The translations under genes were made by a program, and so were the position numbers. The notes under the pieces are model-generated. The model did no database searches. It was not told the DNA's origin and saw only the letters and a program-made list of their open reading frames with translations. This document shows positions 1 to 59,653 of a stretch of 64,000 nt of DNA, in pieces; position 1 is the first letter of the stretch; every line of letters begins with the position of its first letter. This stretch comes from Lytechinus pictus. Lineage: Eukaryota. Where the stretch lies: positions 13,578,001-13,642,000 of the forward strand of contig NC_087246.1 of NCBI RefSeq assembly GCF_037042905.1, written 5' to 3'.

Positions 1-42
1 TTGCTACTATTCAGTTCGCGGAGATTATTGTTGTTGAGCCAT
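1..42 (-). CDS. Gene B further LRR exon, truncated by the window edge
   Basis: TTGCAG acceptor followed by LWLNNNNLRELNSS. Confidence 0.8.
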
Positions 43-3000
43 CTGCAATTTGAAAGGAAAATCGGAGGAGGTTATAAGCCAAGAACTATATTAATTTGAA
101 CATATCTAGTTATGCAAATGACTATACAATCAAATCAGGGGCCGCGGAACGGTTTTCAAAGGGGGGGGGGCTGACCATGCAAAAAATCACAATCCTATGG
201 TAATTTTTACGTTTTTGTACACGGTTTTGGAAAAAAGTGTGGGGGGGCTGAAGCCCCCCCCCCCCCGCTTCCGCAAATATGTAAAATCTATACCTTGCTG
301 TGGAAAGAATGAACTCGAAGCAGGTGGTGAAAGGCACAATAATATTTTTATGTAGGCCTATCACCTATGTATGTGAGTCAAAATGCAAAATGCAGCAAAA
401 CGATACTCAAATTAGAGATGTGAATCAATAAAGCATCGATTTATCATCTAAAGCGTCTATTTGAAACACTCAATAGAAAATCAAAGCGCTACAGATTTAT
501 CATGTTTATGCATACATATTATACAAATGTTGCCTAGTATAATAGTTCAAACATATTTCCTTATTATATATGCGTGTGCAGAATTCTATGCTTGAATAAT
601 TAATGAATATATATCAATGTTCTAATTCTAATAATCCTCCTCAGACTTTCTTATTGGCAGGTATATTTGCAGTATCATACAAAGATCTACAACCGAATAA
701 CAAGTAAGAATTTACTCACAATCCATATAAGCTACCGAAGTATATTTCGTTTGTTAAACCTGTTACGTTGTTATAGTCGAGATACCTGTATAATAAAAAT
801 GTAACCAGAGATCAGATATTGAGTAACGTTTAATGATTCTTTACAAATGGAGAATTGAATAATACTTAAGTCGCGATATGTAAAGAGTCATTAAATATTG
901 AAGTCGCGATATGTAAAGAGTCATTGAAAGTTACTCTTATATTTATATTGTAAACAAGACTTTACATGACGTCCGTGTAGCTGGTTATACTTTTATAAAC
1001 CGCTGAACAAAATTCTATTGGTCAAAACCTACCAAAAGCGTAACGTTATTCTTACTGATAAGTTTCACTCGCCCTTTAGAAACATCCCTGTTTAAAGCCT
1101 TGAATGAAAGCCTATTACTATGACGCACAAATATTCACTGCTGAATGATACGTGCCGTATAAGCTAAAACAACAACAATATTTATTTACTTCGCTCTGGT
1201 GAACCCTACGTTCATGTTCGTGTATTAAGTCATAAATACATTTGCTATGACATTTAATTGTGGATGAAAGTATGAGCTGTGTAATAGTGTTCCTAGCATT
1301 GATTGCAGCAACAAATGCTATATCAGGCACCACAATCCTGTTTAAATGTGGATGTATGCTATTAATTTTTTTTTTTTTTATCTATGAAACATATATGGAT
1401 ACTGAAATAATAAAGTAAAAGCTGTAATCAGCACGTATCAATAGGAATGAATTTTAACTTGGATTGTATGGTTCGTTCAATTAGATCTTATTTTAAAAAA
1501 AAAATCAATTTTATGGTTGTTTTATGAAAATATTTATTAAGTTTATATTTAGGTAGAATTGGCCTTTTGGGCTACAAAGTTCACCTTTTTTCAGTTAAAA
1601 GAATGGGGTAATCTAAACATTACATACACACGTTGTATTACTTTGTCGTGTTTGTCATAAGGTTATGCCTTCATAAGGCAACGACCAATGAAATAAGATT
1701 ATTTAATGGCAACGCTGATCTTTGGCTGTCTGCAAATCTCTCTGCGAGCAAATCAATATGAAAGAGGTATTAAGAAAGAATATCGGACAATCTTTAAGCA
1801 GAGATAAAATCCAGAGTCGGAATCTATTTCTGTCGGGTCTATGCCTGTATGGAAATCTGATAAAGTTGATATAGAAGTCGGATGACACGATATTTTCAGT
1901 AAAATTTGGGCGAACACGTTTATCGTAATTATAAATTAGTCATTGTACTCACAGATATTGCAGTGACGGTAAGACATGAAATGTTCCGCTTTGAACACGG
2001 GTGATCATGTTTCTTCCAATTGACCTGTCATTTGTGAATACCGTATACGTAGAATAAATTAAGAGTTTTATCTACACATTTTAACACATCCTTTTTCGTT
2101 CTTTTTTATTTCTGTCTCGCCCTCGGTCACATGCACACACCTCATACACATTCTCATTGTGTGTCCCAATGGGAACCCATTTATCTTTCACATCAAAGCA
2201 AAGCTGCATTATTTTCAAAATTTTGAATTTGATCCACTACCTATTAAAGCAAAGCTGCATTATTTTCAAAATTTTGAATTTGATCCACTAACCGGGCTCA
2301 ATTTCAGACATTTTAAAAGTAAAAACAGGAGCGTAAACTCTCAAGTGACCAAACATGCAATCTGTGGTGTTTTTATTTTCTTTTAATTTCCATTAATTAG
2401 AAATAAAAATCTAGATTCATACCGCATGGAATAATAGAAATGAAAGGTAATGAGGACTGCACAAACGATGCAACAGGCTTTAAATACTTACAATGTTCTC
2501 AATCGAACAAGACCAGAAAAAACGGCTGAAGAAAGGGACTGGATACGATTTTCAGACAGGTCCCTGAAATTATATATATATATATATAAAAACGATATTG
2601 TTCAGAAATATGCTGTATGTTTGTTACATGTTTATTGTCATGGAAGATGCAAAGAAGTTATTTATTGGAAATACAATACTTACAAAAATGCAAGTTTCTG
2701 CAGACCATCGAATGTTCCATCTCCAATATACTCGATGACGTTTGCGCGTAGAATTCTGGTATAAAGGTACAATATTTAAATACATGTACATTATTTTTTT
2801 CTCTTAAAAAAATTGAAGTATTTCTATAAGTCTACCTTTCATATATACGATTTTTACTTTAGTCATTACCAATTTCTCGAATATCTTTACATGTACATCA
2901 CAAAATAGCAAAAGTGTATCAAGGGGAAAAACTTGGTATTCTATTCTGGAAGTCTAATTTATTCGTTGACAGATATAGTTAAAATGAAAGTAATATACGG

Positions 3001-6000
3001 CAAACATACGGCGCTATTATTTTACATGTCAGTTATATCATACACGGAGTTCATAAAGTATAAGGACGAATGTTAATTATGGAAAACTATGTAAATCAGA
3101 TATGGATATATTAAGTAAATGCGTAAAATAAATAACACATGCTTATATTCTGCAAATTCAACAAAAACACCTTAAATCAGTAGTGAAAAAACGAGACCTT
3201 GATCACAACACTAGAAATTAACTGGGCGCAGGTGTTTTAAAAAGCTAAAAGATTAAGTTATAAATGATAAAAATTAAATTAACAATAACAAATAAACAAA
3301 TCGAATTACAGTTAAAGCAATTTAAATTCATAAGAGCACTAATCAATGATTTGAATTATGAATGGAATTTATCAAATCATTGCCGTTTCATGACTTGGAA
3401 ATTTCATCAACAAGACTATGCTGAATTCATTTAAATATATTTCAAATACAAATGTATATTTGTTTAGAACAGAATCAACTCTCTGTTTAAATGATTTCCT
3501 TTTACAATCCTTTCATGTTTACCCCACTTGGAGCCAAGGTGTAGATCGTAATAACCGAAAGTCAAAGTTACTTTAGTTCTCATTAGTTCTCATCGTTTAT
3601 ACCTTCTAATTCTTAAGCATATTCCGATTGATATTGTACTTTAAATTTGACTATGTATTGTTACTTTGATTTTGTTGTGCTTTGTGAACGGAAAATGAAT
3701 AAAATCTAAATCTAAATCTAAATGACCGAAAGGTATGATGACACCATGAAAAGCATCCTCTCTGTCTCTTTTACTTCAGACTTTGTAAAACAGTAGCAAA
3801 GAATAGCCATATAGCTTGAATGCGAGATTAGACCCCATTAAGTACTTACAGTTGCTCCAGGCTCACCATTCCTGAGAAGACTCGCTTTCCCAATGAAGAG
3901 ATGTTTTGTCCCGTTCGAGAGCTGCGCGGAGATAACATATAGAAAACAGAAGTTATCGGAATGCTTTCAGCAATCGGGTGTTCTCACTGTGCGTGCGTGA
4001 TGGTGTGTGTGTGGGTATGGGTGGGTAAGTGGGTGTGTGCGTGGGTGTACGTGAGCAGTTTATCAAAGTTATCATATTTTTTTTGCTATTCTTGATAGAC
4101 ATGCCTATGTCTTCATTTTAAAGGAAGCATTATGTTGCCCTTTTTTCATTCACATAAAATATAACACACGGCATAGAGATGGTTCAGGATATTTGTTTCG
4201 TTTCATTCATAGTGATATTAGCTAATAACTTTGCAAAAACTTCAGATAATGTCAAGATGAATTTATTATTATTATTATTGTTATCAATATTTTTATTATT
4301 ATTATTATCAGTAGTAGTATTGTTATCATTATTATTATTATCATTGTTATTATTATCATCATCATTATTATTATTATTATTATTATAAGAGTTGAGTCAT
4401 TTGATCTGTATATCATGTAACAGGTTACTCAATGGAGTTTGTAATAACATGATTTTGGGGATATATGCAACAACAAAATGCGTATGAGTGTGTGTGCTTG
4501 GGTGTGTATAGAGGTTTTATTACGTAATCGTACCCCATAAATGCATGGATCGTGACCATACCGATAATATTTATCTATCGACACCTACAATAGTAATGTA
4601 TTCTCCTTGACGATAAATTGCCAATTCGTATATTGCCAACTAGTCCACTCATCACACTGTCTACCTCTATTTAGTCTAATGGCATTCCGTCCATCAACAA
4701 TTCGTCTAACAACCATTTGGTCCAATAATCACTTCTTTTAATCACCAGTTCGTCTATGACGATTTGGTCTCATAACCATTTGGTCTACTAACAATTTTCT
4801 TTTCTTTCATTTCGCTCAATAACATTTAGTCAAATTAGACCAAATGGTATGGATTAAACATACTGGTAAATATACTGTATAAACACTTGTCAAATGCTTT
4901 AGTCCCAATTGAGAAGACATCTTATGTCGGTCACTGAAAGCTATTGGCATATTGTGCCAACGTGCGCACTCGGTAAATAGACAAAATGTGTAGGTTTTTT
5001 TCTTCGTTTTGATATCCAAGTTACATGTTTGTAAGACGGTAATTCGGTAATGACACAATTAAGTAATATGTATTTCATAATCAGTTGTGTATTTTGTTAG
5101 CAAAATTTGATTTTTCATTTGGATTTTTTGTAAGAAAAAACACTTTTCGAATGCAATAGCTTCAAAATTATATTGAATTAAATGATATGTTTTTATAATT
5201 TAAATATAATTTTGTTATCTACAGATACCACCTTTATCTTGCTGAGTTAACTCACACTACTCTTTCATCCTCTTGGCACTTCAGTATTTGTCCAAGGTTA
5301 GAACTAAATAATTGCAGCTCTGTTGAAGTCCTTGAGGAAATAAGAAATTGAATTGAAGAAGAAAATTACTGTACCCGATTATCACTTCAGGGAGGTATAC
5401 TACGTTTATCATTATGATGAATAATTGAAAATTCGATCAATATATTTTAGATCATTACAATGGTACAAAATGAGACAAAATCACATATTTAAAGAGATCT
5501 CCCAGTGCAGCATTTGTTCCACCATTCAGAAGTTCAAAGTCAAAGTTGAGCCCTTTTTTAAATTAAAGTCTTAGAGTGAAGAAAGGGCTTTCTCTCATCT
5601 CTTCACCATGTTCATGATTGCGTTATACATGACGTAACCCTATTTCCCAAAATGAGCCTTGAAATTGAATACTTACATACATTTCAATGCCGCTGATGTA
5701 TAAGAAGTTTCAGACAAATCATATTGAAAGCATTTTCCTAAAAAAATAAAAATAAAAAAAACCCGGTCATAATCGTTTAATTTGAAAAGGAAATATATGT
5801 ATCTCTTCATTTTTCGTTATAATTAGATATGCCAACTGGGCAGCTTGCCTACAAGTGCGTATAAATTCTTTAATATATAATACAATGTCAAGGACCCTTT
5901 CCTCCCCCCATCATAAATAAAAAAGTGTGTTTAAATGTATAATTCGAAGTAAATTCGAATAAATAAAAAAATTTAATGGTCTTACCTGAAGCCGAGTCGT

Positions 6001-9000
6001 TTGCCTTTTGCATAAGTGAGTGACACTCACTTTCTTTGCGAATAAAATAAATTAAAAATGTTATTCTTTAGGACTTTTGTATTTGAATAAAATCTAGAAA
6101 AACATTTAGTATAATTTCCATTTGTAAAATATTTGTCGAATTAAGCCTATTTCAAGTTTTGGTAAATCCTTCCAAACTGTCAGCAACCTAATTCATTATA
6201 AGAGTTATAATGTCGATGATACAGAATACAAATGAATTTTGAGAATTTCCATGACAATTTATTCACTCGGGTGCCCAAATAAATCACCTTTGTTGCTTTC
6301 TGATATCCAATCACAAATTTTGTAAAATACTTAATCAAAAGAACCGTTTAGAGAAAACTAAGTTCACTGTGGGAGATAGATAGACAGATAGATAAATAGA
6401 TAGATAGATGGATGGATTAATAGATAAAAAGTGGAATGTTTTTCCATACCTTGCAAATTCATTCCATAGGTACATAAAGCGGTAATGCAGATATTTCCTG
6501 CAATACAGAATAAGTATTTAAGAGTTTTGATTACTATCCATAGTGACGTATCGAGATCGATCTCAGTAAAGACACTGTTTAATATTTGTTTATATAAAGA
6601 TGTTCACTATATGAAATTTACCCTCTTAAACAAGTGTTCAAAATTTAAAATTAACATGGATGTTTAAACTGTTAAACAACTACTATTGAATTCATAAAGT
6701 AAACTGCGTTGTGTAAAATTTTGAACAGCGTTTTCACTGCGTTGGTATAATAGTATCATGTTGTTTCCAACTTTAAAGGGCATAATAATCTAAGAATATA
6801 TAAATATCACTTCATCATCATGTAAGTGTGCGCTAATAATAACCTAGTTTTTTTACTTGGTATTTTTGCTATTAGTTTTAAAGCTAGATCAAATATTTAC
6901 CTGTTTTCATGGTTTCTACGTTGGGCAAACATTTGTAAGTCATGTATTTAAAAAAAAAAAAAAGGTTTCCATTCTTTCCCATTACTTTATGATTTGATCT
7001 AATACAACCATAATTATTTTTGTGACATCAGGTTGTCTTGTAATTCAGAAAAGAAAGAAAATGATGAAGGTTTAAAGTGTTCCATGATGATAATTTATAT
7101 ATCTCATTACAAATTTTCCTTGCGGCTGCTTCGCTCTCCACATTTTCTGTTGGGCAGAGTTATCCAGAGGCAAAAATAATTCATACATACCTCCTGAACA
7201 AACAATCCTTGCATCTTGAGAATGATTACATTTGTCTTCGTATGCTATTCCCACTCCAGGACAATCGAAGAATCTGGATTCATTCCCAGAGCAATTTACA
7301 TAATCAAGAGTAACATCAATGTGACTGGCGTCAGAAATACCCCAAGAAGAAATTTCGATCGCATGTCCTTGTTCAAGACTTCTGCAGACAACATTACCGT
7401 CGTTCACGTCCCACGAATCCGCGGAAACTGACCGCTGTTTACCATTATAGTAGTACATGACTACACCGTCTAAGAAACTCCTACCATCAGCTAAATAGAT
7501 TTCTTCGTCTATAGATTGAATGGAGACATACAGGAACAAAATTTTGACTTTCTGATTATGGCTCAATCAACCTTTCCAGGGCAATCAGTTTGTAAATATA
7601 TATAAAATATAGACACATCAAGAAATTACAATTCGTTCACCCATAGACCCGACTGGTCTTGGCTGAATATAAAACATGATATAAAAGGAATATGGTGCGT
7701 TGACATCATATTAAAGCAGGAATTGCTTAAACACGAATCCCCCTTTCAATGTGTATTTATTCTGGTGGAGATCACCCCAGCAAAGAGAATAGATTGGTAA
7801 CTTTTCTGTAATGAATTATCATGCCAGAATACAGATGATGTGCTGATCAATCTATATGTATAGCTTTCATGGGATGACAAAAGTCAAAGTGTAAAAATAC
7901 AGGAACAAAATAAACATAAATACCTTCAGAGGAGCAAACAACCTCAGCTCCATCGAGATAACAATAGTCTGTTCGTCCAAGTCTTGCATTCGGACAGTCC
8001 AGTATATTGGTTTCCTTACCAGTGCAACGGGTATCTGACAGGTATATATTTCTTTCGCCAAAGCCGAAGGAAGAATCAGTAGGAACTTGCAGGGCGCCAG
8101 CGTAACCCAAACTTTTGCATATGACATGTCCATCATTAAGGGTCCAGTCTGTCATACAAACAGTGCCCCATGTTGATTTTGAAAACACTTCTATTCTTCC
8201 TTCACTCCTATTTCTGCCATCCATTAGACGAACTGCGATAAGAACAAGAAATATAACAAAATAATCCTTCTTGACTTCATAGAAGTCCTTCTTGACTTCA
8301 TAGAAGTTGTAAAATGTCATATAAATTTTCGATTAAGACATATAAAACATTTTTATGAAGCTCTGTATTATTTTAGGGCTATTACCAACTGTATTTTTTT
8401 TTTATTGTTAATGACCTCTTTTCCTCTTGGTGACAAAATACATGTATAGATACAGGGTGTCAACCATCGCAGAGGGACCACACGACCACTTGTGAAAGCC
8501 CCTTTACGATTATCTATTAAATGACACTGTTGCTGTAACGATAGTGTATTCACAAAGAAAATAGAAATATATATATATATATATATATAAATATACATGT
8601 ATATATATATATGGCTTACTCATCCACATATAACTATGATCAACTTTGTCGTGGAAAAAGTTATATTGATGAAATATTCCCTCAATAAAATTAATATGGA
8701 ATATGTATTTAAATAGATTGTACTCTAGAATATCGGAATGATTTTATGATATACCTTTGTTTTAATAAATATACCAAAATACTGAAATAAACATATCACA
8801 AGTTCGATCGTGGTCTTGAGCTGGAACTCGGCTTTCAACTTTTATTTCGTGTCTTGGTCAGTTATATTCGGTTGTCAATCAAGTTCGAACTACTTTCATA
8901 CACTTTATCGTTTTACCGCCACTTTTCTATTTTTATGTAATGCTCGAGGCGTAAATAGCAAACTGAAAGAAAATCCTAAGTTAAAGAATGAAAATATTTA

Positions 9001-11117
9001 AAGAAATACTAGACTGGACTTTTGTTTGAAGCCCATCTAAAACTTTGGTTAAAGTTTAATAATGTGAATTATCTCAACCCAGACAGAAATACACGGGAGG
9101 CGAATATGCAGTTTCCGTGGAGTTTAATCAATAATTGTTTCCGCAGAGCATCTTCCCAAATTTTCCAATCGTTGATTCTTAGTGAAAATTTGAATTATGA
9201 TGTTATTACGTATCTAGCGCCCTCTCTCGATAATGTTTTTATTACTCTTTAACAACGGTCTCTTAGCACTTACAGTTATTAGATATCAAAGCGTTACGGG
9301 CAAACACGTCCTAAAATTTCAGCCTTTTCCATGCCTCAGAAATAGTCAAATTAAAAAAAAACAGATATCACATCTATAAGGGCAGTAGATCAAACATTTC
9401 AAAACAGATTACAATGTGAAATCGATAAATATGTCAAGTAAAACATATTTTTGTATTGTAACCTCTTCATCATAATTGACGTATATACTAGCATATGATA
9501 TAGAAATGAGGTCGAATTAAATCACGCGCTTTAATGATTTAACATAACTTAAAAGGGCCTTAATAAAAAAAAAATTATTCTTATGTAATTCATTGCACAC
9601 AAAACAAATCTAGCATTTCGCGTGGATGAAAAATTGTGTACATTTACATTTTTTTTAATTTTTACACTCAAAACGATATGATAATAACACATAACCGATT
9701 TGTTACATTCTGGAAGTTACACTTTAAATTAAAACTCACCTCCACTAGAACATTGTACTCTCGCTCTTCGAGTAGAGTTACACTTGCCAATGCTGAAAGT
9801 AGATCCAGGACACGCCAATAAACTGGATTCACTTCCATTGCACCTCACGTCACTTAAAATGTAATCTTCTCTCTCCCTTGTAGAGATATGACTTTCGTCA
9901 ATGGCTAAAGCTCTACCAAGTCCAAGTTCTCTGCAAAGTACATGTCCATCGTCTAGATCCCATTGGTCACTGCAAACCAGCCTCCAAGATCCGAGGTAGA
10001 ACACCTCTACCCTTCCCTCGCCCAGAAAGTTGGAATCCGTCAGGCGAACTGCAAAATAAAAATCCATGATTAGGCCATATAATTTACCGGGAACCAAATA
10101 AATACGAATTGTGTTTATATTGGAAAGTAAGATTTGTGGAAGAATGGTTATATCCTTATCATACCCCCCCAAAAAATCGTTTTGGACAATGGATCGAACA
10201 ACCCAATATAACATAGAGGAAATACATAAATATATATTAGTAAACAAAACATCTCCATGAACGGAGTAGCCGTTGGCTAGTGTGAGATTGTGACGATATT
10301 AGAGGGTAAATTTCGGAGGAAAGATCCGTCTGGCAACGATAATTTGTCCATTATAGTAGCCCTTGATCAATTGGTAAACAAGAAATGTGCTTTCATCTTT
10401 ATTACATCTTAAAATGATAGATAAAATTCATCAACGCCATCTTGATCAAGCATTAGCAAGTAAAATGTTTTCCATGTGCATTCCATGTACATGATGTAAA
10501 CATTATAATACAATACTCACTTGTGTAATTCGTACAAACTACCGAGGCTTTCAAATATTTATTACACACTCCAAATAGATCGACACGACTATTCGGACAA
10601 TCTAACAACCTAGTCTCATTCCCGACACATCGCACATCATAGAGAAGAATACCGGGATGCTTTTTGTAGATGTAGTTATCATTAAAAACTGCACCGCTGA
10701 ACCCAAGTTCTGAACACGTAACTTCAGCATCAGCGAGACCCCAGCTAGGTTCTTCGCAAATGCCTCCCCAAGTTCCATTTATATTGACCAGAACGAATCC
10801 TTCAGACGATTGGTCGTTGCCGTATTTGTCAACAAGACGGACATTCTTATCTGTCGGAATAAAATATAGAAAACATAAAAGGGAGCTCAAATAAGCGTTG
10901 AAAAGGCATGCCTAAATGTTATATACAAAATAAACCTATCGTATTTCTTTTACATCGGATAGAAGACGACAAATAAAATTGAAAGTCATATTAGGAACTT
11001 ACCAACTGATTGACCAACATTTTTCATGTTAGACAAAGAAAATTTTATTCTTTCTCCTAAAAGACATATCATAAATGCACCGTAAATAAATGCAAGTGAA
11101 ATTTTACGAAGAGGCAT
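1..11117 (-). CDS. Gene B: tandem paralog of gene A (signal peptide-SRCR x4-cap-LRR...), 3' end outside the window
   Basis: In-frame exons: 11117-11003, 10850-10521, 10048-9740, 8232-7924, 7508-7191, 6033-5986, 5737-5677, 5330-5256, 3921-3850, 2755-2684, 2563-2492, 2024-1953, 785-720, and 42 to the window edge. No stops found. The 7TM exon is not visible and is inferred from paralogy only. Confidence 0.85.
136..274. mobile_element. Truncated copy of the same MITE, opposite orientation
   Basis: CAGGGGCCGCGGAACGGTTTTCAAAG...TTTTGTACACGGTTTTGG... is the reverse complement of the 56629-56814 element. Confidence 0.75.
720..785 (-). CDS. Gene B LRR exon 5
   Basis: 66 nt: LYLDYNNVTGLTNEIYFGSLYG. 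Confidence 0.85.
1953..2024 (-). CDS. Gene B LRR exon 4
   Basis: 72 nt: LSIGRNMITRVQSGTFHVLPSLQY. Confidence 0.88.
2195..2290. repeat. Tandem duplication, period 51
   Basis: AAAGCAAAGCTGCATTATTTTCAAAATTTTGAATTTGATCCACTA occurs twice. Confidence 0.9.
2492..2563 (-). CDS. Gene B LRR exon 3
   Basis: 72 nt: LDLSENRIQSLSSAVFSGLVRLRT. Confidence 0.9.
2684..2755 (-). CDS. Gene B LRR exon 2
   Basis: 72 nt: LILRANVIEYIGDGTFDGLQKLAF. Confidence 0.9.
3850..3921 (-). CDS. Gene B LRR exon 1
   Basis: 72 nt: VSRTGQNISSLGKRVFSGMVSLEQL. Confidence 0.85.
4262..4386. repeat. Imperfect (TAT)n microsatellite
   Basis: TTA/TCA triplet run. Confidence 0.9.
5256..6033 (-). CDS. Gene B three small linker/LRR-cap exons (6033-5986, 5737-5677, 5330-5256)
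   Basis: ESECHSLMQKANDSAS / GKCFQYDLSETSYTSAALKC / MTSTELQLFSSNLGQILKCQEDERV; 48, 61 and 75 nt. Confidence 0.8.
7191..7508 (-). CDS. Gene B SRCR domain 4 exon (divergent)
   Basis: DEEIYLADGRSFLDGVVMYYYNGKQRSVS...VVCRSL...VNCSGNESRFFDCPG...CNHSQDARIVCS; 318 nt. Confidence 0.9.
7924..8232 (-). CDS. Gene B SRCR domain 3 exon
   Basis: VRLMDGRNRSEGRIEVFSKSTWGTVCMTDWTLNDGHVICKSLGY...CTGKETNILDC...C..DGAEVVCS; 309 nt. Confidence 0.92.
9740..10048 (-). CDS. Gene B SRCR domain 2 exon
   Basis: RLTDSNFLGEGRVEVFYLGSWRLVCSDQWDLDDGHVLCRELG...VRCNGSESSLLAC...C...VQCS; 309 nt. Confidence 0.92.
10521..10850 (-). CDS. Gene B SRCR domain 1 exon
   Basis: VRLVDKYG...EGFVLVNINGTWGGIC...WGLADAEVTCSELGF...VRCVGNETRLLDC...C...ASVVC; 330 nt. 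Confidence 0.92.
11003..11117 (-). CDS. Gene B coding exon 1, signal peptide
   Basis: accATG context; MPLRKISLAFIYGAFMICLLGERIKFSLSNMKNVGQSV followed by a phase-1 GTAAG donor; 115 nt. Confidence 0.82.
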
Positions 11118-14509: not shown

Positions 14510-15003
14510 TGTAATGTAGTGATTGTATAAATCACTACATACATATAGCCTAGACGTCATAAATGTAAAATACCCCTTCTAAGAACCATCCCTTTTTATG
14601 TCCATACCCCCTTCTCAGAACCCCTATTCATTTATTTAATCCACGCCAATAAAAACCCCTATTGTTAATAGTTCAAGCAACCCCTAATCATAGAACAAAC
14701 AACTGCCTTCCCCTTCCCAATGATCAAACCCCCCTTTTGTCCTATACCCAAACACTTGGATTATGATTTATGTAGAAGCTTGAATATATATTGAGTGTAC
14801 ATCCAAGGGTGGAGGTTAGATAAGTTAAGATCATCACAGAGTTAAGATCTACATCGACGTACGTTGTGATACGCTTTTCAACTCTACATGTAATATTGCT
14901 GAAGACTGATTATTAATAAAGTTTCTTGATTGAATTTTACATCGATTGTTCCTGTCTGGTCATTGATGCTCCCAACTAAGATATGAACGATCCCAACACA
15001 ACA
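14510..15003 (+). repeat. 5' LTR
   Basis: TGTAATGTAG...CACAACA; identical to 22941-23434 except G14722 versus A23153; contains AATAAA. Confidence 0.97.
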
Positions 15004-15018
15004 TGGTGGAGAACCCGG
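15004..15018 (+). promoter_or_regulatory. Primer-binding site (tRNA-Ala-like)
   Basis: TGGTGGAGAACCCGG directly follows the 5' LTR. TGG pairs with the tRNA CCA end, and TGGAGA matches the ...UCUCCA 3' end typical of tRNA-Ala. Confidence 0.7.
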
Positions 15019-15863
15019 CTTTTTATTCACTAGTGCTATAGAAGACTGACACTTATTTACCCTTGGAGTAGGTGTCGAAAGCCTGTAGAGTGGTGCGTCA
15101 GAAGACTTATCATATCACATATATGTTCATCAAAATCTTCAACAACAACAACAACAAAAGTTAATAATGAAATAGGAGGAAAACTTTGGACCAGGGTCAG
15201 CGACGATCGACAACATTTACTCAGCTCACTAGATGACGAAAATTAGGAACCTCCTAGCCTACAGTGACAGTGATCTCCAGCCAAACTGTACACAACCAAA
15301 AACAGAAATGACGCTGCATGCCAGAGACGGATAAGACACAGACGACGGATGACTGGAGAGACGACGGATGACTGAAGGGACCTCGACAGCTGTGATGACT
15401 TCGGAAGACGACAGCCATATGTGTGACACAGCAACTGGATCAACGGACAGACCATTGAGAACTGAAGGACTTTGATGCTCGACTACCTTTTCCTTGGATC
15501 GATGTGGATGTTATTCGGCCATATGACTTTTAATAACTTTTTTTTATGAGACCAATCTAATAATTTCATTCTGATGTCCTTCTACATTTGCTTGGTTACT
15601 TTGGTAAGTGAAACACTTTTCATTGTTCCGACCCATGAGTGAGAGCGAGAGATGATATTTATATAGAATTCCTTTGTATCTATGGTTTATCTATTGATTT
15701 CGACAATTACATGGTACTGTTAGATTTAATACCTTGTCCTAAAATTTAATTTCGTTTTGGTATAAAACAGTGTAGGAGTAGATTCCCCCTCTTAAAGTTC
15801 TGGATAAATATTAAGCTGAACATTGCCTACCAATTACTGAACAGTAATAATTTGACCATTAAT

Positions 15864-16877: not shown

Positions 16878-16917
16878 GACGGGAAGGAGTCAACAGCGCT
16901 CGTTATCTTCCTTCCCG
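16868..16917 (+). promoter_or_regulatory. Programmed -1 ribosomal frameshift signal
   Basis: G_GAT_TTT heptamer before the gag TAA, a 5-nt spacer, then a stem CGGGAAGGA (16880-16888) / TCCTTCCCG (16909-16917). Pol lies in the -1 frame. Confidence 0.8.
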
Positions 16918-37300: not shown

Positions 37301-38091
37301 TAAGAATATGCATTATACAAAGAGGCAATGATGCACTAACGTATCAATTCAAGTAAATAATAAAACACCGTTTAGATTTATGATGTGTTTCGAATATTCG
37401 GTTTCTTACTTCAGGTCGCTATACAGTATAACTTATCAAATACCAGTATTTATAATCTATATGTGCTGTCAATGACAGTTAACAATTGCAGATGTTTCAT
37501 ATCTTGCCAACAATGCAGCAGATCTTAGTAATCGCTTCCGTAGGAAGGATTTTACAGTGACTTATAAAGTAGCTACCGGTTAATCCATCGTATGTGTTAG
37601 CACACTCATACCAGAGGCGTCGATCATGGGGGGCAGGAGGGGCAACCGCCCCACCAATGAAAATATTGGGGGGGGCAAACATATCATTTTGCCCCCCCCC
37701 CCAATAATTCCGCATGTGCAAAAAATAAAATAAGATTGTAATGTTACACAGAAATCAGCAAGCGAGATTGAGATACACAACTCGTTCTTCATCTAAAATC
37801 GTGCTCAAAATGTCCGGTTTTCAGATTAGAATATTAAAAAATTTCAGCTCGCGCTTCGCGCTCGCATCATTTCTGTAGCAAAAATCCATACTTTTCATGA
37901 TTGAAAAGGTGAATAGAATGTCCCGTTTTCAGTTCTATACCTCGAAAGAACTCCCACTTCGATTTGCAATAATCTTTTGTTGGATATATTTATTGTTTTT
38001 TTTAAGATCAAAATATCAAAATTTTCAGCTCGCGCTTTGCGCTCGCATCTATCATTTTTTAATTTTTTTAAAATTTAATTTGTTGGTGAGA

Positions 38092-38135
<44 letters not shown>

Positions 38136-47100: not shown

Positions 47101-47830
47101 TCAATCTCAAAGAAGGCAAACTGTCAATTTTTTCATTAGACACTGTGATACAGGAACCTGCAATATCAGATTAGATCAGATTGCTTAGATATTGCTATGA
47201 CCAAGAAATCTGGTGGGTAGGATTAAGAAATGTGAATGGATGAAATTTGGTCTTTATGTCTTAATTCGTTCTACATGACATGTTCTATGATGTTAGGCTC
47301 AAAACCTTTCAGTCGGCTATCGTACAATCAAACTAAAAGTAATTCGCTTTAAGTTTGTATTATCATGATAATAGCTAAACATTATTTTCTTCTGCATAGA
47401 ATTGCTTTTCATTTCATTCTGTTCCTCTCGTCTGTATAATATACCATAAGACATTCTCGTAATAAGGTCTCATTAAATAGAAATATAATAAATAAAAAAA
47501 AATCACAGTATAAAAAATAGCACGTTGTTTAACCCGGGGTTTAACCCTGTCACGATAACAACAACAAGTTGTTTAATTTGAAAATGTTTTAAACTTTAAC
47601 TAGTTTACAAAGTTTAAACAGTTGCTTAAAAGGTAGTTGTTAGAGTGACGGGCCCTATGTTTTAAACAGCGTTCTTTGCGTCAGATGTCACCCCTAAACG
47701 GAACAATAAACTCACCATCGGCGACATTTCGATGAGGCAAGAAGAGAGACGCATGTTTTCCACATGTTAAGAATATTAATATGTAAACCAAATGACACCA
47801 ACAAATTACATTTGATTTGTAGGAATCCAT
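27216..47830 (-). CDS. Gene A: complete multi-exon SRCR(x4)-LRR(x10)-7TM receptor of the LGR/GRL101-like class A GPCR type, 1138 aa
   Basis: 19 GT-AG exons join in frame: 47830-47716, 46728-46399, 45851-45537, 43814-43503, 41098-40781, 39317-39285, 39065-39005, 38445-38371, 37282-37211, 36455-36384, 35267-35196, 33149-33078, 32328-32263, 31372-31304, 30537-30469, 30053-29982, 29271-29200, 28747-28676, 28365-27216. Total 3417 nt, divisible by 3. Introns are phase 1 around the SRCR exons and phase 2 between the LRR exons. Exon lengths are mirrored in paralog B. Confidence 0.88.
28676..28747 (-). CDS. Gene A LRR exon 10
   Basis: 72 nt: IFMVDLQLHSIKRNVLTGLTSLKA. Confidence 0.85.
29200..29271 (-). 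CDS. Gene A LRR exon 9
   Basis: 72 nt: LDISNNPIVQIDPGVFLNTAHLEF. Confidence 0.9.
29982..30053 (-). CDS. Gene A LRR exon 8
   Basis: 72 nt: LNISSNDIRHLAKEDFRDLSTLYF. Confidence 0.9.
30469..30537 (-). CDS. Gene A LRR exon 7
   Basis: 69 nt: LWLQVNNLVSLDGILDGLDELEN. Confidence 0.88.
31304..31372 (-). CDS. Gene A LRR exon 6
   Basis: 69 nt: LHIMDNRIRLIENRSLYGMGLYQ. Confidence 0.82.
32029..32178. mobile_element. Short MITE
   Basis: GGGGGTGTTT / AAACACCCCC inverted ends with further imperfect pairing. Confidence 0.45.
32263..32328 (-). CDS. Gene A LRR exon 5
   Basis: 66 nt: IYLNDNNITTITEDVFDGTINL; matched by a 66-nt exon in gene B. Confidence 0.88.
33078..33149 (-). CDS. Gene A LRR exon 4
   Basis: 72 nt: MSLEYNKIEEIHNGAFHGLPSLKN; GTTAG donor. 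Confidence 0.88.
35196..35267 (-). CDS. Gene A LRR exon 3
   Basis: 72 nt: IDLSFNKITVISAGIFANLPMLTT. Confidence 0.9.
36384..36455 (-). CDS. Gene A LRR exon 2
   Basis: 72 nt: LFLDSNMIESVPDGIFEGLDNLEF. Confidence 0.9.
37211..37282 (-). CDS. Gene A LRR exon 1
   Basis: 72 nt, phase 2/2: VRLSSSNITLLAQEVFSELKSLKYL. Confidence 0.88.
37612..38270. mobile_element. Non-autonomous hAT-type DNA transposon in a gene A intron
   Basis: TIRs CAGAGGCGTCGATC / GATCGACGCCCCTG and a perfect 8-bp TSD ACTCATAC (37604-37611 and 38271-38278). Confidence 0.88.
38371..39317 (-). CDS. Gene A three small Cys-containing linker/LRR-cap exons (39317-39285, 39065-39005, 38445-38371)
   Basis: GYGCRYLEPIS / GHCYQYEHRNGGGGPFILRCL / SHLEDQSSNSSFGQILDCQRELRTV. 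The 61-nt and 75-nt exons have equal-length homologs in gene B (GKCFQY...LKC; LGQILKCQ). Confidence 0.8.
40098..40568. mobile_element. Harbinger-like MITE in a gene A intron
   Basis: Imperfect TIRs AGGGATGATCAC...ACCGGTTTGGATGG / CCATCTAAACCGGT..GTGATCGCCCT. Confidence 0.5.
40781..41098 (-). CDS. Gene A SRCR domain 4 exon (divergent)
   Basis: DEIIYLTDGSSSLDGVVMYYYNGQHRSVC...VVCRSL...LDRVECTGNESRLFDCPG...C...VMCS; 318 nt. Confidence 0.9.
43503..43814 (-). CDS. Gene A SRCR domain 3 exon
   Basis: RLVGGRNISEGRVEVFARSSWGTTCGRDWTLNNAHVICKSLGF...CTGRENNIFDC...C..NDGAGVQCS; 312 nt. Confidence 0.92.
45537..45851 (-). CDS. Gene A SRCR domain 2 exon
   Basis: RLTGGQYPWAGVVEVFYNDSWIPVCNDHWDINDGRVVCKYLG...CRGNESSILEC...C...VRCS; 315 nt, phase 1/1. 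Confidence 0.92.
46399..46728 (-). CDS. Gene A SRCR domain 1 exon
   Basis: VRLVD...GIVQVFLNGSWGDIC...W...DADVACRCLGF...C...ES...C...C...ASASC; CAG acceptor, GTAAG donor; 330 nt. Confidence 0.92.
47716..47830 (-). CDS. Gene A coding exon 1, signal-peptide-like
   Basis: Encodes MDSYKSNVICWCHLVYILIFLTCGKHASLFLPHRNVAD followed by a phase-1 GTGAG donor. 115 nt, the same length as gene B exon 1. Confidence 0.8.
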
Positions 47831-49138: not shown

Positions 49139-49204
<66 letters not shown>

Positions 49205-54935: not shown

Positions 54936-56628
54936 TAAGGCATGACTGAAATGAATTAATTCAAATGTTAATGTCATAATCCTACAAGAGTTGCATCAAA
55001 ATCAATTTCACAATATTTTCCAGTAATTGACATTGTAATTGTTTAATAGTATCAATTTTTAGTATCAATTCTTCATTGAAAAGTGATTTGCAAATACTTT
55101 TGATGAATTTTCCGGCGTTAAGCTTGTTTGATTTTCGTCTTTTTATTCAACTTAAGTATTTTCGGAGTAAACTTGACCTTTAATATTGAGATCCTTAAGG
55201 AAAGGAAGGTCACAACGCTGGGCAGCTACTTAGTGAGCTAAATAAACCTATACATGATCCATTATATTTATATAACTTTATAAATGAATGTTTCTGAGAA
55301 TTTATGGGGTTTTATTCAGCATCAAATAATATTACTTTAAAATATGGTAAAAGCAATCCATTGTTGAAGTCTTGACGGAGTCCTTGAATGCAAAACTTGC
55401 AACTGTTATAAGCTACTGAAATTGTGAATTCAGTTGGTGAACAGCATCGTCATTTAAATTTACGATTTATTTTATTTATACACAAAGAAAAGGAATATGG
55501 TAAATGACAAATATAACGTAAAAGTTCTGAAATAGGAAAGGATTCTATCCTCTCTCACTTCTCTCTCACTCTCTGTCTCCCCTCCACCCCTCTCTCCCCT
55601 CTTCTCTCTCTCTCTCTCTCTCCCCCTCTCACTATCTCCTAATATATCCCTCCCTGTTCCTCTTTCTCTGTAACTTTTAATGGAATGTAACGTTTTGGGG
55701 ATAGGAAATGAGCGTAAAAGTAATAAAAAATTTTGTTCATTTTTTCTCCTTTATTTCATGATGTACCTTAATGTAGATGAGGTCGATAAGAATGGCAAAC
55801 TCTTTGACTTTAAGGATACCATCAATCTGTCTGAAGGGCGAGTGGATGTGTATGTAAATGGATCCTGGGAAACTATCTGCATCAATGACTGGGACATAAT
55901 CGATGCCTCAATTGTCTGCATCAGCCTAGGTTTCATCGAAGCAGCGAAAGCATATTTCGCATACAGTGGCAACTACAATTTTTTTGTGTGATGTGGATTG
56001 CTTTGACAATGAGACGACCATCTCTGATTGCCCACATAGTAAGCCAACTGAGTACGTGCAAAATTATCTTCCCAATGCAGCAGTTTGGTGCCAAAACAAT
56101 ACAAGTATTTCACCTACTAAAGTAATTACATATGAATGTGAGGCAGGATATACGCAGATCGCAATCCACGGCACATAAAATCTCTATCTTTATATTCCTT
56201 ACTGAAAATTTGTTGCTATTTGATCGGTCGAGAGCCATTCACGTGACTAATCATAATTTCACCGGAAAAATGAAATTTATTGGAGATCAAAATAGTTCGT
56301 GACGTCAGAGTAGAATATTTGTTTAAAAACTATTTTGCGTCCGACTGGAAACCACGCAATCACTCGGGCACAGCGCACGACGGACTGCCTTTACCGGACA
56401 AGTCTAGTGATGCACCGATGGTAGCTTCGCGCAGTCTATTCAGGAACCGGTTATCTTAGAATGATAAGCCAATTTTGCATAAATTAGAGCTAAGCTGATC
56501 TAGATTTTGTCCATATCATGGAGATGGGCCATAGGGGTGTTTCACCAGCGACTTGGTTCAGCAATTCAACAACTGATAAAGATCATGTGCTGTCAAAGAC
56601 CACTCGATAGGGCGTGCTGCCTGACTGT

Positions 56629-56814
56629 AGGGGCCGCGGAACCTGAGGGGCTGGGGGGGGGGCTTCAGCCCCCCCCCCCCCCCACTTTTATCCAAAACCG
56701 TGTACAAAAACTTAAAATTGACCATATGATTGTGATTTTTAGCATGGTCAGCCCCCCCACTTTTGGCTCAGCCCCCCCCCCCCCCCCCACTTTGAAAACC
56801 GTTCCGCGGCCCCT
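56629..56814. mobile_element. MITE with poly-G/poly-C tracts
   Basis: Perfect 14-bp TIR AGGGGCCGCGGAAC / GTTCCGCGGCCCCT; a related copy lies at 136-274. Confidence 0.8.
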
Positions 56815-58452
56815 GTTCAGACATACAGTGCAGAAGGAATGAATCGAGTATTTTCTTCTGCCCTGGTTCTCGCTTAGGAGTGCACAACTGCAATTCTACA
56901 AGCAGAGCTAATTTGTAAAATGCTTATCTGGTGGTGAGAAATAGATCATACATCATTCTAGAAAATATGTGAAGTGTATGATTTGGGTTTAAAATAAATG
57001 TGTATCAATCAAATATGATTTATTAACATTTGTGGTCGTACGTCATCACCAAAAAGACGTCGAATCTGGATTCTGTTCTCATTGGGTGATAAGTTCTTTA
57101 TTAAAGCATATATTTTGTTATTATCAGTGTTCCATGTTGACTTGAAAATCAAGCCTTTATACTAGTTTCCTTTGTACTATTTTCTCTATTTGCAAATCTT
57201 TTGTTGTGATTTTAATTTTTTTTTAATGATAATTATTTGTACTTTTGAAAATATTATACGGTATATAGGCCTACATGTGTTTCTTCAAGTACAATTCTCT
57301 ATATTGATCATTCAAAGTTCGATTAACTTGAGGTCAATATCCATATGAAGGAAGGGTGGAGGTATTTAACAAGTCTTCATGGGGATTTATTTATCTGTGG
57401 TGAAAGATGGTCGCTGAACAACGCCCATATCATTTGCAGTCAAGGATTCACCCATGCAACAAAAGCCTATGGATGACCTCAATTTGAAAAAAAGGTCCTC
57501 GCTATACCCACCTGGCCGATGCCCGTTCTTCAGGGGAAGAGTCCAATATTTTCGACTGCCCCGGTGTGCATTTCGATATATCTAATTTTTGTTATTTAGA
57601 TGACGGGGCTGGAGTTAAGTGTTCAAATAAAGGTGAGACTGTTAATTTTTTTCCACGAATATATCATCTTAGCTAAACAGAATTGCAATGTACTCTGACC
57701 CTTGAAAATTTAAGTTTTCATATTTTGGATTCGTTGCATAAAAATTTTGCCATGGAAAAACTCTGGAAATTTTTTTGCCAATTTTTCTTAATGTGTAAAC
57801 TTAAATGACATTATTTTGTTTGTCAGAGCTTTTGTATGGCAAAATATTTATGCAACGGGTGCCAGGTTTGGCAATTAAAAGAAAATAAATAAATGGCATT
57901 AAAATTTACTTCGCTTGTTTTCCAGCTCTCAGGACGTTGTCGATTCTTGCGGAAACATGATTAACATAATATCTAGGATAACGATAAAATGATAAAGATA
58001 CACGAATCGTACAAAATTTAAAAAAGAGAGGTAAATGAAAATGAATTCCTTGAGAAATTAAGACAATATTTATCGCTTTCTCCTTGATCACGTTGAATGA
58101 CTATGAAAAGAACACCTAAGAATTTAATGAGCTTGTAAAAACATAAGGAAAGCATACTGTAACGTAGTTTCTTTAATCTTTTCAAGAATAGATGACACTG
58201 CATACCTTGTTAATGGGAGCAATTCTCTTGAAGGCAAGGTAACACTTTAACGGGCAAAGGGGATCAGTATGCGGGGAGACATGGAGTATGAACGTCGTCT
58301 GCAGAAGTCTAGGACTTGGCCATGCATTAAGTATTTCCACGTCACCCTTATCGGCTGGAGCCTCAGAGTTCTTAGTGGACAGTCTGAATTGCATAGGAAT
58401 TGAGTCTCATGTATTCGACTGTCCAGGAATAATCAATAGATCCAAAGACAAT

Positions 58453-58883
58453 AAGCCTGTTCACGGTTGTAAACTGCGCACGAGCAGAAAAAGGTCATTG
58501 GAGACAACCATGAAGGTGGCTTTCAAATTCACTGACATAGGCATTTGTGATTTGATGATTATTCATGTATTCCTTTCAAAACATTTATCACATCCAAGCT
58601 GAACAGTAATAAATAGAGCCTTCATAATCACTGGTATTTGACAGTAGCCTAAACAATAGTCAAATGTGCCAAAGGCAGACAATAAAACAGATTTCCAAAC
58701 TTTATCCCTGATGTACTATTCTAGTCACCTGGTCTATACAATGCCTTTTGTTCTTAGAATTTGAATACTCTACCGGTAAAGCTTACGCAACATCTACATT
58801 TGAAAATGATAGTGCTTATCCTAATGAAAAATCACAAAGGTCATTGGAGAAAAGTTGATCATGAGCTAACCGTGAACTGGCTT
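58453..58883. mobile_element. MITE inserted in the gene C SRCR4 exon
   Basis: 16-bp TIR AAGCCTGTTCACGGTT / AACCGTGAACTGGCTT (1 mismatch) with an AT duplication. Removing it restores ...SKDN-CNGSGNAQVVCYG. Confidence 0.85.
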
Positions 58884-59653
58884 ATTGTAACGGTTCCGGA
58901 AATGCGCAAGTAGTATGCTATGGTGGTAACTGTACCCGTAGGTGATATATACTTTAAAAAGTTAAAAAAAAATTATTATCATCATCATCATCATTAATAT
59001 TGGAATTGTCATTAACAATATTATTTTCATTTGTATTATATTTTAATTATGAATATTTGATCTTTATACCGATGTTTTTTTTATTTTTTTTTTATTTTTT
59101 TTTACCGGCAATGATGTGTTGTTATCTATTTCCCTACAAATTTACAGCTAATCTCTGTGCAGCCGGTATATGCAAACTTGGACCAAATGGAAAAGGTAGG
59201 CCTTACATATAATTGCCAAATTCAACGGCGTTATTCTAAACAAAATAATTTTGAATAATCTGTGACGATCTCCGATGTCCATGCTTAGGTTTTTGAGATG
59301 GTGCTGGTGCAAAATGTAAAGGTTGGTGGTGACAGCAATAAAGAGGGTGCTTAATTCGGTACATAATTGCACTTGTTCACATCGATACTTTTGAATTGTG
59401 CAAAATATTAGGGCGTAAACATATTTATTGACTGTCCTAGTACTTTTCTGTATAAATTGTCATATGTGAACACGATGAACATACCAATGTCGTGTGGGGA
59501 TATTACTGAAGTTGATCAGTTGACAACATGATATTTCATTAATAATACTGCCAAGAAGCTCTTGCATACTTATTCAATCTTTAAAGGGACCGAATGCATC
59601 TATCTAGCAGAAACCAATTGCCATTTGTCATTTGGTAAGTTTTGTTAACATGG

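What the first reader, a model, noticed from the sequence alone, without database searches (positions are those of the whole stretch)
1..59634. Birth-and-death cluster: two intact tandem paralogs plus one inverted pseudogene
Seen: A and B share their exon plan almost exactly (115/330/315 vs 309/312 vs 309/318/33 vs 48/61/75/72/72/72/72/66 nt). Their protein sequences are strongly diverged and I see no intron similarity. C is inverted and disabled. Inference: this is an old, still turning-over multigene family, the pattern typical of immune and chemosensory receptor repertoires.
Basis: partly seen in the sequence, partly recalled or inferred. Interest (0 to 1): 0.75.

Follow-up and report, generated by a model that had tools for sequence, protein, structure and literature searches.

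The report
Sea-urchin SRCR-LRR-GPCR tandem gene cluster
The window holds two intact neighbouring sea-urchin genes for a relaxin-receptor-like G-protein-coupled receptor that carries four scavenger-receptor domains, plus a decayed inverted fragment; the cluster is old and stable, its function is untested, and public annotation predicts it only piecemeal.

Summary
The genome is Lytechinus pictus (chromosome C2).

- **Gene A** (27216-47830, minus strand) rebuilds into an open 1152-aa protein from 20 GT-AG exons.
- **Gene B** rebuilds into 1204 aa from 21 exons. It starts at 11117 and ends 5.9 kb left of the window, where its 7TM exon does exist.
- **Domain plan.** Both are signal peptide, four SRCR domains, a Cys-rich cap, 10 or 11 LRR exons, and one 7TM exon closest to relaxin receptor RXFP1. 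Neither has the LDLa module that defines type C LGRs.
- **Copy C** (55743-58431, plus strand) is a four-SRCR relic with frameshifts, a stop and a half-deleted domain. It has no LRR or 7TM part.
- **The N gap** is intergenic and touches no exon.
- **Family size.** Six 7TM copies form one clade on C2, and at least 33 LGR-like copies exist genome-wide.
- **Age.** A and B each have a 1:1 orthologue in L. variegatus, and A also in S. purpuratus. Their synonymous sites are saturated.
- **Selection on B.** dN/dS is 0.13 in the 7TM exon and 0.42 in the ectodomain, both below 1.
- **Expression.** A spliced contig from a public run confirms two gene A junctions.

"Old multigene family" is supported; "still turning over" and an immune or chemosensory role are not shown. 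The scan noted gene A before (s1-322041).

The parts
27216..47830 (-). Gene A: complete SRCR x4 - LRR - 7TM receptor gene, 20 exons, 1152 aa
   Evidence: Model built. All junctions are GT-AG and the reading frame is open. Pfam finds SRCR four times and 7tm_1. A spliced contig confirms junctions 28747|29200 and 29271|29982, and a contig ends at the 28365 acceptor.
47716..47830 (-). Gene A exon 1 (115 nt): start codon and signal-peptide-like segment
   Evidence: ATG, a hydrophobic core and a GTGAGT donor in phase 1. A's residues 1-613 align to S. purpuratus P0156 from that protein's residue 3, 54.6% identical. This exon is inferred; no RNA shows it.
40781..46728 (-). Gene A SRCR exons S1 46399-46728, S2 45537-45851, S3 43503-43814, S4 40781-41098, one domain per exon
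   Evidence: PF00530 E-values from 3e-17 to 1.5e-22. Phase 1-1 boundaries.
38371..39896 (-). Gene A Cys-rich cap exons: 39855-39896 (42 nt), 39285-39317 (33), 39005-39065 (61), 38371-38445 (75)
   Evidence: The 33-nt exon is the least certain of the four.
28676..37282 (-). Gene A: ten LRR exons (72,72,72,72,66,69,69,72,72,72 nt), all phase 2
   Evidence: The last three are confirmed by a spliced contig. The seven from L4 to L11 are 92-100% identical in L. variegatus.
27216..28365 (-). Gene A hinge and 7TM exon with stop codon (383 aa)
   Evidence: PF00001 1.1e-23. Best solved relative is RXFP1, 2.4e-41. Covered by contigs of runs X1 and X2. 96% nucleotide identity in L. variegatus.
1..11117 (-). 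Gene B, the part inside the window: exon 1 11003-11117; SRCR exons 10521-10850, 9740-10048, 7924-8232, 7191-7508; cap exons 6450-6497, 5986-6033, 5677-5737, 5256-5330; LRR exons 3850-3921, 2684-2755, 2492-2563, 1953-2024, 720-785, and 1-42 (continues left of the window)
   Evidence: The rest of the gene, including the 7TM exon, is at G000:C2:13572093-13577225. RefSeq L. pictus models P0151 and P0152 match residues 1-251 and 372-1204 at 100%. All 21 exons are present ungapped in L. variegatus at 92-100% identity.
55743..58431 (+). C: inverted four-SRCR relic (pseudogene fragment). S1 55743-56106, S2 remnant 56817-56909, S3 57299-57670, S4 58204-58431
   Evidence: tblastn with the A and B exons and three-frame reading. 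Lesions found:
- S1: a frameshift near 55975.
- S2: the 5' half is missing, next to a repeat at 56504-56839.
- S3: an in-frame stop and two frame changes.
- S4: a frameshift near 58240 and a degenerate 3' end.

No LRR or 7TM exon follows on the plus strand out to window position 104000. There is no nucleotide similarity to A or B.
14510..23434 (+). Ty3/gypsy-type LTR retrotransposon in the A-B intergenic region; not part of either gene
   Evidence: The LTRs 14510-15003 and 22941-23434 are 494 bp with one mismatch. The target-site duplication is ATAC and the ends are TG..CA. Pfam finds gag, protease, RT, RNase H and integrase.
23958..24106 (.). Assembly gap (N), intergenic
   Evidence: Its position relative to the gene models comes, and the colinearity of its right flank with L. 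variegatus. Its letters were neither filled nor looked up.

Best explanation
The window covers part of an ancient tandem cluster on Lytechinus pictus chromosome C2. The cluster encodes mosaic leucine-rich-repeat GPCRs.

**Shown**
- Genes A and B are intact paralogues under purifying selection.
- Each encodes a signal peptide, four SRCR domains (one exon each), a Cys-rich cap, 10 or 11 LRRs (one exon each), and a hinge plus rhodopsin-type 7TM domain in one final exon.
- The 7TM domain is closest to relaxin-receptor-type (type C) LGRs. The LDLa module that defines that type is absent, and SRCR domains stand in its place.
- C is an old inverted partial duplicate of the SRCR half that has decayed.
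- The cluster arose by tandem duplication before the Lytechinus-Strongylocentrotus split and has been inherited largely 1:1 since.

**Inferred mechanism**
- The SRCR and LRR ectodomain captures an extracellular ligand.
- Binding is passed through the conserved Cys-rich hinge to a 7TM core that keeps the DR(F/L), CWxP and NPxxY motifs, which activates a G protein.
- The ligand class is unknown.
- The faster-evolving ectodomain suggests that the paralogues differ in ligand specificity.
For: - **Gene models.** Open frames, all GT-AG, matching exon sizes and phases.
- **Domains.** Pfam finds SRCR four times plus 7tm_1, and the B orthologue has LRR_8.
- **Nearest solved structure.** RXFP1 at 2.4e-41, ahead of TSHR, LHR and FSHR.
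- **No LDLa.** None found at E<=0.1 in P0152 or at E<=0.001 in P0001.
- **B's 7TM exon.** It lies at G000:C2:13572158-13573336.
- **L. variegatus locus.** It has the A orthologue, the B orthologue and a next SRCR gene in tandem, and every B exon is conserved.
- **Conservation.** The B coding sequence is 95.7% identical between species, against 83.8% for its introns. pN/pS is 0.13 for the 7TM exon and 0.42 for the ectodomain, both significantly below 1.
- **Tree.** L001-L006 form a clade (SH-aLRT 97) with S. purpuratus sequences nested inside it.
- **Expression.** A spliced contig joins A exons L9-L10-L11 exactly as predicted.
- **RefSeq.** Partial models match B at 100%.
- **Signalling residues.** The motif positions are invariant across 49 relatives.
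Against: - No transcript yet links the SRCR exons to the 7TM exon in L. pictus.
- Current RefSeq splits B into 'lysyl oxidase homolog 2-like' (SRCR1-2) and 'GRL101-like'.
- Two deep RNA-seq runs, sampled at about 6%, gave no reads on A's exons.
- Runs X1 and X2 are only guessed to be RNA.
- A's exon 1 and its 33-nt cap exon rest on sequence logic alone.
- Ligand, G-protein coupling and tissue of expression are all unknown.
- C's link to this family rests on domain order, best-match positions and location, at only 36-48% identity.
Confidence: 0.85

Rival explanations
1. One reading: a rapidly turning-over birth-and-death repertoire like immune or chemosensory receptor families. Frequent gain and loss, with diversifying selection on the ligand-binding domains.
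For: - Tandem paralogues plus a pseudogene are present.
- The ectodomain evolves three times faster than the 7TM exon.
- Other clades of the wider family hold near-identical recent duplicates, on C10, C8 and C9.
- SRCR and LRR domains are common in sea-urchin immune genes (general knowledge).
Against: - A and B have 1:1 orthologues, with identical exon plans, in L. variegatus. A also has one in S. purpuratus.
- Ectodomain pN/pS is 0.42, significantly below 1.
- All six clade members' 7TM exons are intact.
- C is ancient, with no close living paralogue.
Confidence: 0.2
2. A and B are classical endocrine LGRs: receptors for relaxin or insulin-like peptides or for glycoprotein hormones. The SRCR domains would be accessory only.
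For: - The 7TM domain is closest to RXFP1.
- RefSeq names them 'relaxin receptor 2-like' or 'GRL101-like'.
Against: - The LDLa module that characterises type C LGRs, which include the relaxin and GRL101 receptors (PMC11863921), is absent.
- Published surveys find single echinoderm orthologues of the RXFP/LGR3, LGR4 and GRL101 receptors (PMC8286064, PMC11863921). This cluster is additional to those.
- Six diverged paralogues do not fit a single-hormone receptor.
Confidence: 0.1
3. The SRCR part and the LRR-7TM part are separate genes, as current RefSeq has it for B. The joined models would then be artefacts.
For: - RefSeq L. pictus has P0151 (B residues 1-251) and P0152 (B residues 372-1204) as separate proteins.
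- No RNA here spans the SRCR-LRR boundary.
Against: - P0152 begins inside SRCR4, with no signal peptide.
- SRCR3, which neither RefSeq model includes, is intact and 95.5% conserved in L. variegatus with correct splice sites.
- All intron phases are compatible.
- The L. variegatus RefSeq model and an older L. pictus model join the two parts.
- A and B have the same layout independently.
Confidence: 0.08
4. C is not a dead member of this family. It is the remnant of an unrelated multi-SRCR gene that happens to lie next to the cluster.
For: - Identity to A and B is only 36-48%, barely above generic SRCR arrays elsewhere in the genome.
- No LRR or 7TM remnant is present.
- There is no nucleotide similarity to A or B.
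Against: - The four remnants lie in the order S1-S2-S3-S4. The best match of the third is to S3, and of the fourth to S4, of A or B. The second half of the first matches only B's S1.
- The genome-wide best hit of the S4 remnant is B's S4.
- C sits 8 kb from A's start, inside the cluster.
Confidence: 0.2

Closest known systems
Type C LGRs: relaxin receptors RXFP1/RXFP2, Drosophila LGR3/LGR4, and the Lymnaea GRL101 type (C2)
   Same: - Rhodopsin-type 7TM domain, with RXFP1 the best solved match (2.4e-41).
- LRR ectodomain with roughly one LRR per 66-72-nt exon.
- Cys-rich hinge, and the 7TM domain in one terminal exon.
- RefSeq names are 'relaxin receptor 2-like' and 'GRL101-like'.
   Different: - No LDLa module, which is the feature that characterises type C (PMC11863921). 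Four SRCR domains stand at the N-terminus instead.
- Present as a six-gene tandem clade, not as a single orthologue.
Echinoderm mosaic 'GRL101-like' LGR expansion (CUB, LDLa or SRCR modules + LRR + 7TM) predicted in Patiria, Acanthaster, Asterias, Amphiura, Diadema and Strongylocentrotus
   Same: - Same 7TM and LRR backbone, 36-63% identical.
- Modular N-termini.
- S. purpuratus P0176 and P0002 and L. variegatus P0001 and P0178 are direct relatives with SRCR domains.
   Different: - Most members carry CUB and/or LDLa modules, or LRRs only.
- The Asterias protein with nine SRCRs (P0044) falls outside this clade on the 7TM tree, so it may have gained its SRCRs independently.
- I found no paper describing any of these.
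SRCR-superfamily receptors (DMBT1, CD163, WC1, sea-urchin SpSRCR genes)
   Same: Tandem SRCR domains, each on one exon (PF00530).
   Different: Those proteins are secreted or single-pass. Here the SRCR array is joined to LRRs and a seven-helix signalling domain.
SRCR-bearing adhesion-type GPCRs
   Same: SRCR domains sit on the ectodomain of a seven-helix receptor.
   Different: Those have a class B2 (adhesion) 7TM domain and no LRRs. Here the 7TM domain is class A, delta-group LGR type.

Membership tests
LGR (leucine-rich-repeat-containing GPCR, rhodopsin class) | Rhodopsin-family 7TM domain | tested here: met
   PF00001 at 1.1e-23 for A's last exon. The DR, CWxP and NPxxY positions are invariant in an alignment of 49 relatives.
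LGR (leucine-rich-repeat-containing GPCR, rhodopsin class) | Large N-terminal ectodomain with multiple LRRs followed by a Cys-rich hinge | tested here: met
   A has 10 LRR exons and B has 11. LRR_8 scores 7e-40 in P0152, which is B residues 372-1204. The hinge pattern RLCC...C...PL.TC is conserved.
Type C LGR (relaxin / GRL101 type) | One or more LDLa modules at the N-terminus (PMC11863921) | tested here: not met
   No PF00057 hit at E<=0.1 in P0152 or P0151, nor at E<=0.001 in P0001. The cap exons lack the LDLa acidic motif (read from the sequence).
Type C LGR (relaxin / GRL101 type) | 7TM domain groups with RXFP/GRL101 rather than with glycoprotein-hormone or bursicon receptors | tested here: inconclusive
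   RXFP1 is the best PDB hit by 15 orders of magnitude over TSHR. No tree with reference type A, B and C sequences could be built, because no reference sequences were available as ids.
SRCR superfamily | SRCR domains recognised by the family profile | tested here: met
   Four PF00530 hits each in A and B, E from 1e-17 to 1e-24, one exon per domain.
Birth-and-death multigene family | Tandem paralogues together with pseudogenes | tested here: met
   Seven 7TM exons lie within 210 kb, and the C relic is disabled.
Birth-and-death multigene family | Lineage-specific gain and loss between related species (ongoing turnover) | tested here: not met
   For A and B the orthologues are 1:1 in L. variegatus, in the same order, and A also has one in S. 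purpuratus. The other clade members and variation between individuals were not tested.
Birth-and-death multigene family | Diversifying selection on ligand-binding domains | tested here: inconclusive
   Ectodomain pN/pS is 0.42 against 0.13 for the 7TM exon (p=0.0005), but both are below 1. With only two sequences, site-level tests are not possible.

The most novel reading that the evidence does not exclude
The SRCR-LRR-7TM genes would be a distinct, so far undescribed LGR subtype. In it, scavenger-receptor domains replace the LDLa module, so that pattern-recognition-type ligand capture (microbial or polyanionic surfaces, or secreted proteins) is wired directly to G-protein signalling. That would make them an echinoderm 'pattern-recognition GPCR' class whose paralogues are tuned to different ligands.
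Probability: 0.2. Interest if true: 0.7.

Novelty: new variant of a known kind. Interest (0 to 1): 0.42.

Why it matters
LGRs are sorted into three types by their ectodomains. Type C signalling is tied to an LDLa module.

A conserved, expressed echinoid clade keeps the type-C-like 7TM and LRR core but swaps LDLa for four SRCR domains. This shows that the activation module is exchangeable.

It also offers a tractable case of exon shuffling creating a new receptor input. If the SRCR array binds microbial or matrix ligands, this would be a direct scavenger-receptor-to-G-protein pathway.

On the practical side, the report gives corrected full-length models for two L. pictus genes that RefSeq currently splits or truncates.

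Tried and rejected
- **LRR motif regex.** A regular-expression scan for LRR motifs found almost nothing useful, because the repeats are split across exons. I replaced it with exon-by-exon alignment to the L. variegatus orthologue.
- **5' exon of RefSeq models P0001 and P0153.** It maps to an old retroelement fragment right of the gap (24567-24620 and 24531-24869). I rejected it as the start in favour of the 115-nt signal-peptide exon. That exon is 94.8% conserved in L. variegatus and identical to RefSeq P0151. An alternative upstream promoter is not excluded.
- **Missing LRR exon in A.** I searched A's intron 31373-32262 for a counterpart of B's exon L6 and found none.
- **A-B dN/dS.** Synonymous sites are saturated, so no ratio can be given.
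- **Rest of the C2 cluster.** I did not try to obtain those letters another way. SRCR content of the other cluster genes therefore rests on coordinates only.
- **Raw RNA-seq runs X6 and X7.** They gave no reads on A's exons at about 6% sampling. This is no evidence of silence.
- **Literature.** Searches for an SRCR-LGR description found none. The library lacks most subscription journals, so this is weak evidence of novelty.
- **Earlier scan notes.** A word search of the scan's findings returned nothing.
Full report
**Source and gap.** The window is G000:C2:13578001-13642000 of an 812-Mb animal genome. Cluster look-ups show RefSeq proteins of Lytechinus pictus on a contig of exactly the same length, 70,580,802 bp. 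So this is the painted sea urchin. The only N run is 23958-24106. It lies between gene A's stop codon (27216) and gene B's start codon (11117). It is 523 bp right of the 3' LTR of a retrotransposon and more than 3 kb from any exon, so continuity or frame across it does not affect any claim here. The sequence right of the gap (24107-25021) aligns colinearly with the orthologous L. variegatus intergenic region, up to the gap edge. The 523 bp on its left found no match.

**Checking the observation.** Six-frame reading and Pfam show two sets of four SRCR exons on the minus strand, at 46.8-40.7 kb and 10.9-7.1 kb. A 393-codon open frame with a rhodopsin-type 7TM domain lies at 27219-28397. Three SRCR remnants lie on the plus strand at 55.7-58.6 kb.

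I aligned the L. variegatus protein P0001 exon by exon and enumerated phase-compatible AG/GT sites. From this I rebuilt both genes.
- Gene A: 20 exons, 1152 aa, 27216-47830.
- Gene B: 21 exons, 1204 aa, from 11117 to 5,908 bp left of the window.

Every junction is GT-AG. There are three corrections:
- Two small cap exons precede the 61-nt exon (42+33 nt in A, 48+48 nt in B).
- A lacks B's sixth LRR exon.
- B's exon L6 straddles window position 1.

B's 7TM exon exists at G000:C2:13572158-13573336 and is 71% identical to A's.

Three independent lines support the models:
- RefSeq L. pictus P0151 and P0152 match B residues 1-251 and 372-1204 at 100%.
- All 21 B exons, and A's last eight, are present ungapped with splice sites in L. 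variegatus at 92-100% identity.
- A 201-nt contig from public run X1 joins 28691-28747, 29200-29271 and 29982-30053. These are exactly A's exons L11, L10 and L9, and the skipped stretches end in CT..AC, which is GT..AG on the minus strand. Another contig ends at the 28365 acceptor.

**Divergence between A and B.** Overall protein identity is 55%.

| Region | A-B identity |
|---|---|
| 7TM exon | 72% |
| SRCR1-4 | 53% |
| LRRs | 43% |
| Cap | 33% |

Synonymous sites are saturated. At the DNA level only the 7TM, SRCR3 and SRCR4 exons align, and no intron does.

**Copy C.** Four SRCR remnants lie in the order S1-S2-S3-S4 on the plus strand. The third matches S3 best, and the fourth matches S4 best, in A or B. 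The lesions are as follows:
- S1 has a frameshift near 55975.
- S2 has lost its 5' half, next to a repeat at 56504-56839.
- S3 has an in-frame stop and two frame changes.
- S4 has a frameshift near 58240 and a degenerate end.

No LRR or 7TM exon follows on that strand within 45 kb. C shares no nucleotide similarity with A or B. Its best genome-wide protein match is B's SRCR4 at 48%, only slightly above unrelated SRCR arrays. It is therefore an ancient partial relic. A 20% chance remains that it comes from an unrelated SRCR gene.

**What the genes are.** The 7TM exon's best solved relative is relaxin receptor RXFP1 (2.4e-41), followed by TSHR, LHR and FSHR. The LRRs come one per 66-72-nt phase-2 exon, and the hinge RLCC...C...PL.TC is conserved across relatives. 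These are LGR hallmarks.

Type C LGRs, which include the relaxin and GRL101 receptors, are characterised by an N-terminal LDLa module (PMC11863921). None is detectable here, even at E<=0.1. Four SRCR domains occupy that end instead. So the genes work like LGRs and are nearest to type C by their 7TM domain, but they fail that type's defining ectodomain feature.

**Family size and history.**
- The genome holds at least 33 full-length LGR-like 7TM exons at 35% identity or more. Clusters lie on C2, C9, C10, C11 and C16.
- Seven lie within 210 kb around the window, and all seven are open.
- On a 7TM tree, six of them (A, B and L003-L006) form one clade (SH-aLRT 97). S. purpuratus sequences nest inside it: P0002 is sister to A plus its L. 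variegatus orthologue, and P0003 is sister to L005.
- The seventh, gene D, lies just right of the window and belongs to the C9-cluster clade.
- SRCR4-like exons sit upstream of at least four clade members: A, B, L003 and L004.
- The L. variegatus locus shows the same tandem order: A orthologue, B orthologue, then another SRCR gene.

The duplications therefore predate the Lytechinus-Strongylocentrotus split, and orthology has been 1:1 since then for the genes I could test.

**Selection.** These figures compare L. pictus B with L. variegatus B.

| Region | pN/pS | p (ratio below 1) |
|---|---|---|
| 7TM exon | 0.13 | 4e-14 |
| LRRs | 0.34 | 0.0015 |
| SRCR1-4 | 0.44 | 0.0035 |
| Whole ectodomain | 0.42 | 5e-05 |

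The coding sequence is 95.7% identical, against 83.8% for aligned introns. The ectodomain-versus-7TM difference is significant (Fisher p=0.0005). The cap has too few changes to judge. So constraint is not uniform: the ligand-binding side is relaxed about threefold. There is no domain-level sign of positive selection.

**Verdict on the interpretation.** 'Old multigene family with a dead member' is right. 'Still turning over' and the immune or chemosensory parallel are not supported for this clade, although other clades of the wider family contain near-identical recent duplicates.

**Mechanism (inferred).** The SRCR and LRR ectodomain binds an extracellular ligand. The hinge relays binding to a 7TM core that keeps the DR(F/L), CWxP and NPxxY motifs. 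Ligand, coupling and tissue are unknown.

**Distribution and novelty.**
- SRCR+LRR+7tm_1 proteins are predicted in S. purpuratus (P0176, P0002), L. variegatus (P0001, P0178), L. pictus (P0180, with CUB as well) and Asterias (P0044, nine SRCRs, a different 7TM clade).
- An octocoral protein (P0218) has a different arrangement, with one SRCR inside the LRR region.
- Other echinoderm relatives carry CUB and/or LDLa modules.
- Published LGR surveys of echinoderms report single RXFP/LGR3, LGR4 and GRL101 orthologues and do not mention this expansion (PMC8286064, PMC11863921).
- I found no paper describing SRCR-LGRs, but the library is incomplete.

I rate it a new variant of a known kind. It is present in public annotation but fragmented and unstudied.

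Noticed in passing
window 14510-23434 (+): A young, apparently complete Ty3/gypsy-type LTR retrotransposon sits 3.4 kb upstream of gene B's start. Its 494-bp LTRs differ by one base, the target-site duplication is ATAC, and the gag and pol frames are open (375 and 1612 codons). The L. variegatus A-B spacer is about 8 kb shorter, which suggests the element is absent there. Described only.
   Followed up: partly
window 24107-25271 (-): An old retroelement fragment (integrase C-terminus-like, Pfam 0.004) lies right of the gap and is conserved at about 84% with L. variegatus. RefSeq models in both species (P0001, P0153) use it as a 5' coding exon of gene B. This is probably a prediction artefact. 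If it is real, the LTR element and the gap would lie in B's first intron.
   Followed up: partly
window 1-11117 and G000:C2:13572093-13578000: Current RefSeq splits gene B into 'lysyl oxidase homolog 2-like' (XP_063962340, SRCR1-2) and 'GRL101-like' (XP_063951837, which starts inside SRCR4). It leaves the intact SRCR3 exon unassigned. The L. variegatus model also skips the conserved LRR exon at 2492-2563.
   Followed up: yes
L032 and L034, = window 68080-76130 (outside the window, minus strand): The next gene to the right (D) is an LRR-7TM gene 79-82% identical to members of a cluster on chromosome C9. No SRCR exon was found up to window position 104000. It looks like a member of another subfamily that has moved into the C2 cluster.
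   Followed up: partly
window 122-364, 56504-56839 (also 157-263 vs 56653-56765): A dispersed repeat whose translation contains GGG(L/A)QPPPPP occurs in B's intron and inside C's SRCR2 remnant, 87% identical over 113 bp. Another short repeat, at 6646-6743, has dozens of copies genome-wide.
   Followed up: no
window 31052-31098 and 32080-32112: Two short intronic stretches of gene A attract very deep RNA coverage with loose ends on both sides in all four runs. They are probably fragments of a repeat transcribed elsewhere, not exons of A.
   Followed up: no
window 63384-64000 (-): Open frames resemble the tail of a non-LTR retrotransposon ORF2 (a judgement from memory of such sequences). Pfam found nothing.
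   Followed up: no
G000:C10:25778534-25880013; C8:29574327 and 37159016; C9:7552915 and 7610068: Other clades of the LGR-like family contain near-identical 7TM copies, with terminal branches of 0.03 or less. Recent duplication does occur in the wider family, even though the SRCR clade is stable.
   Followed up: no
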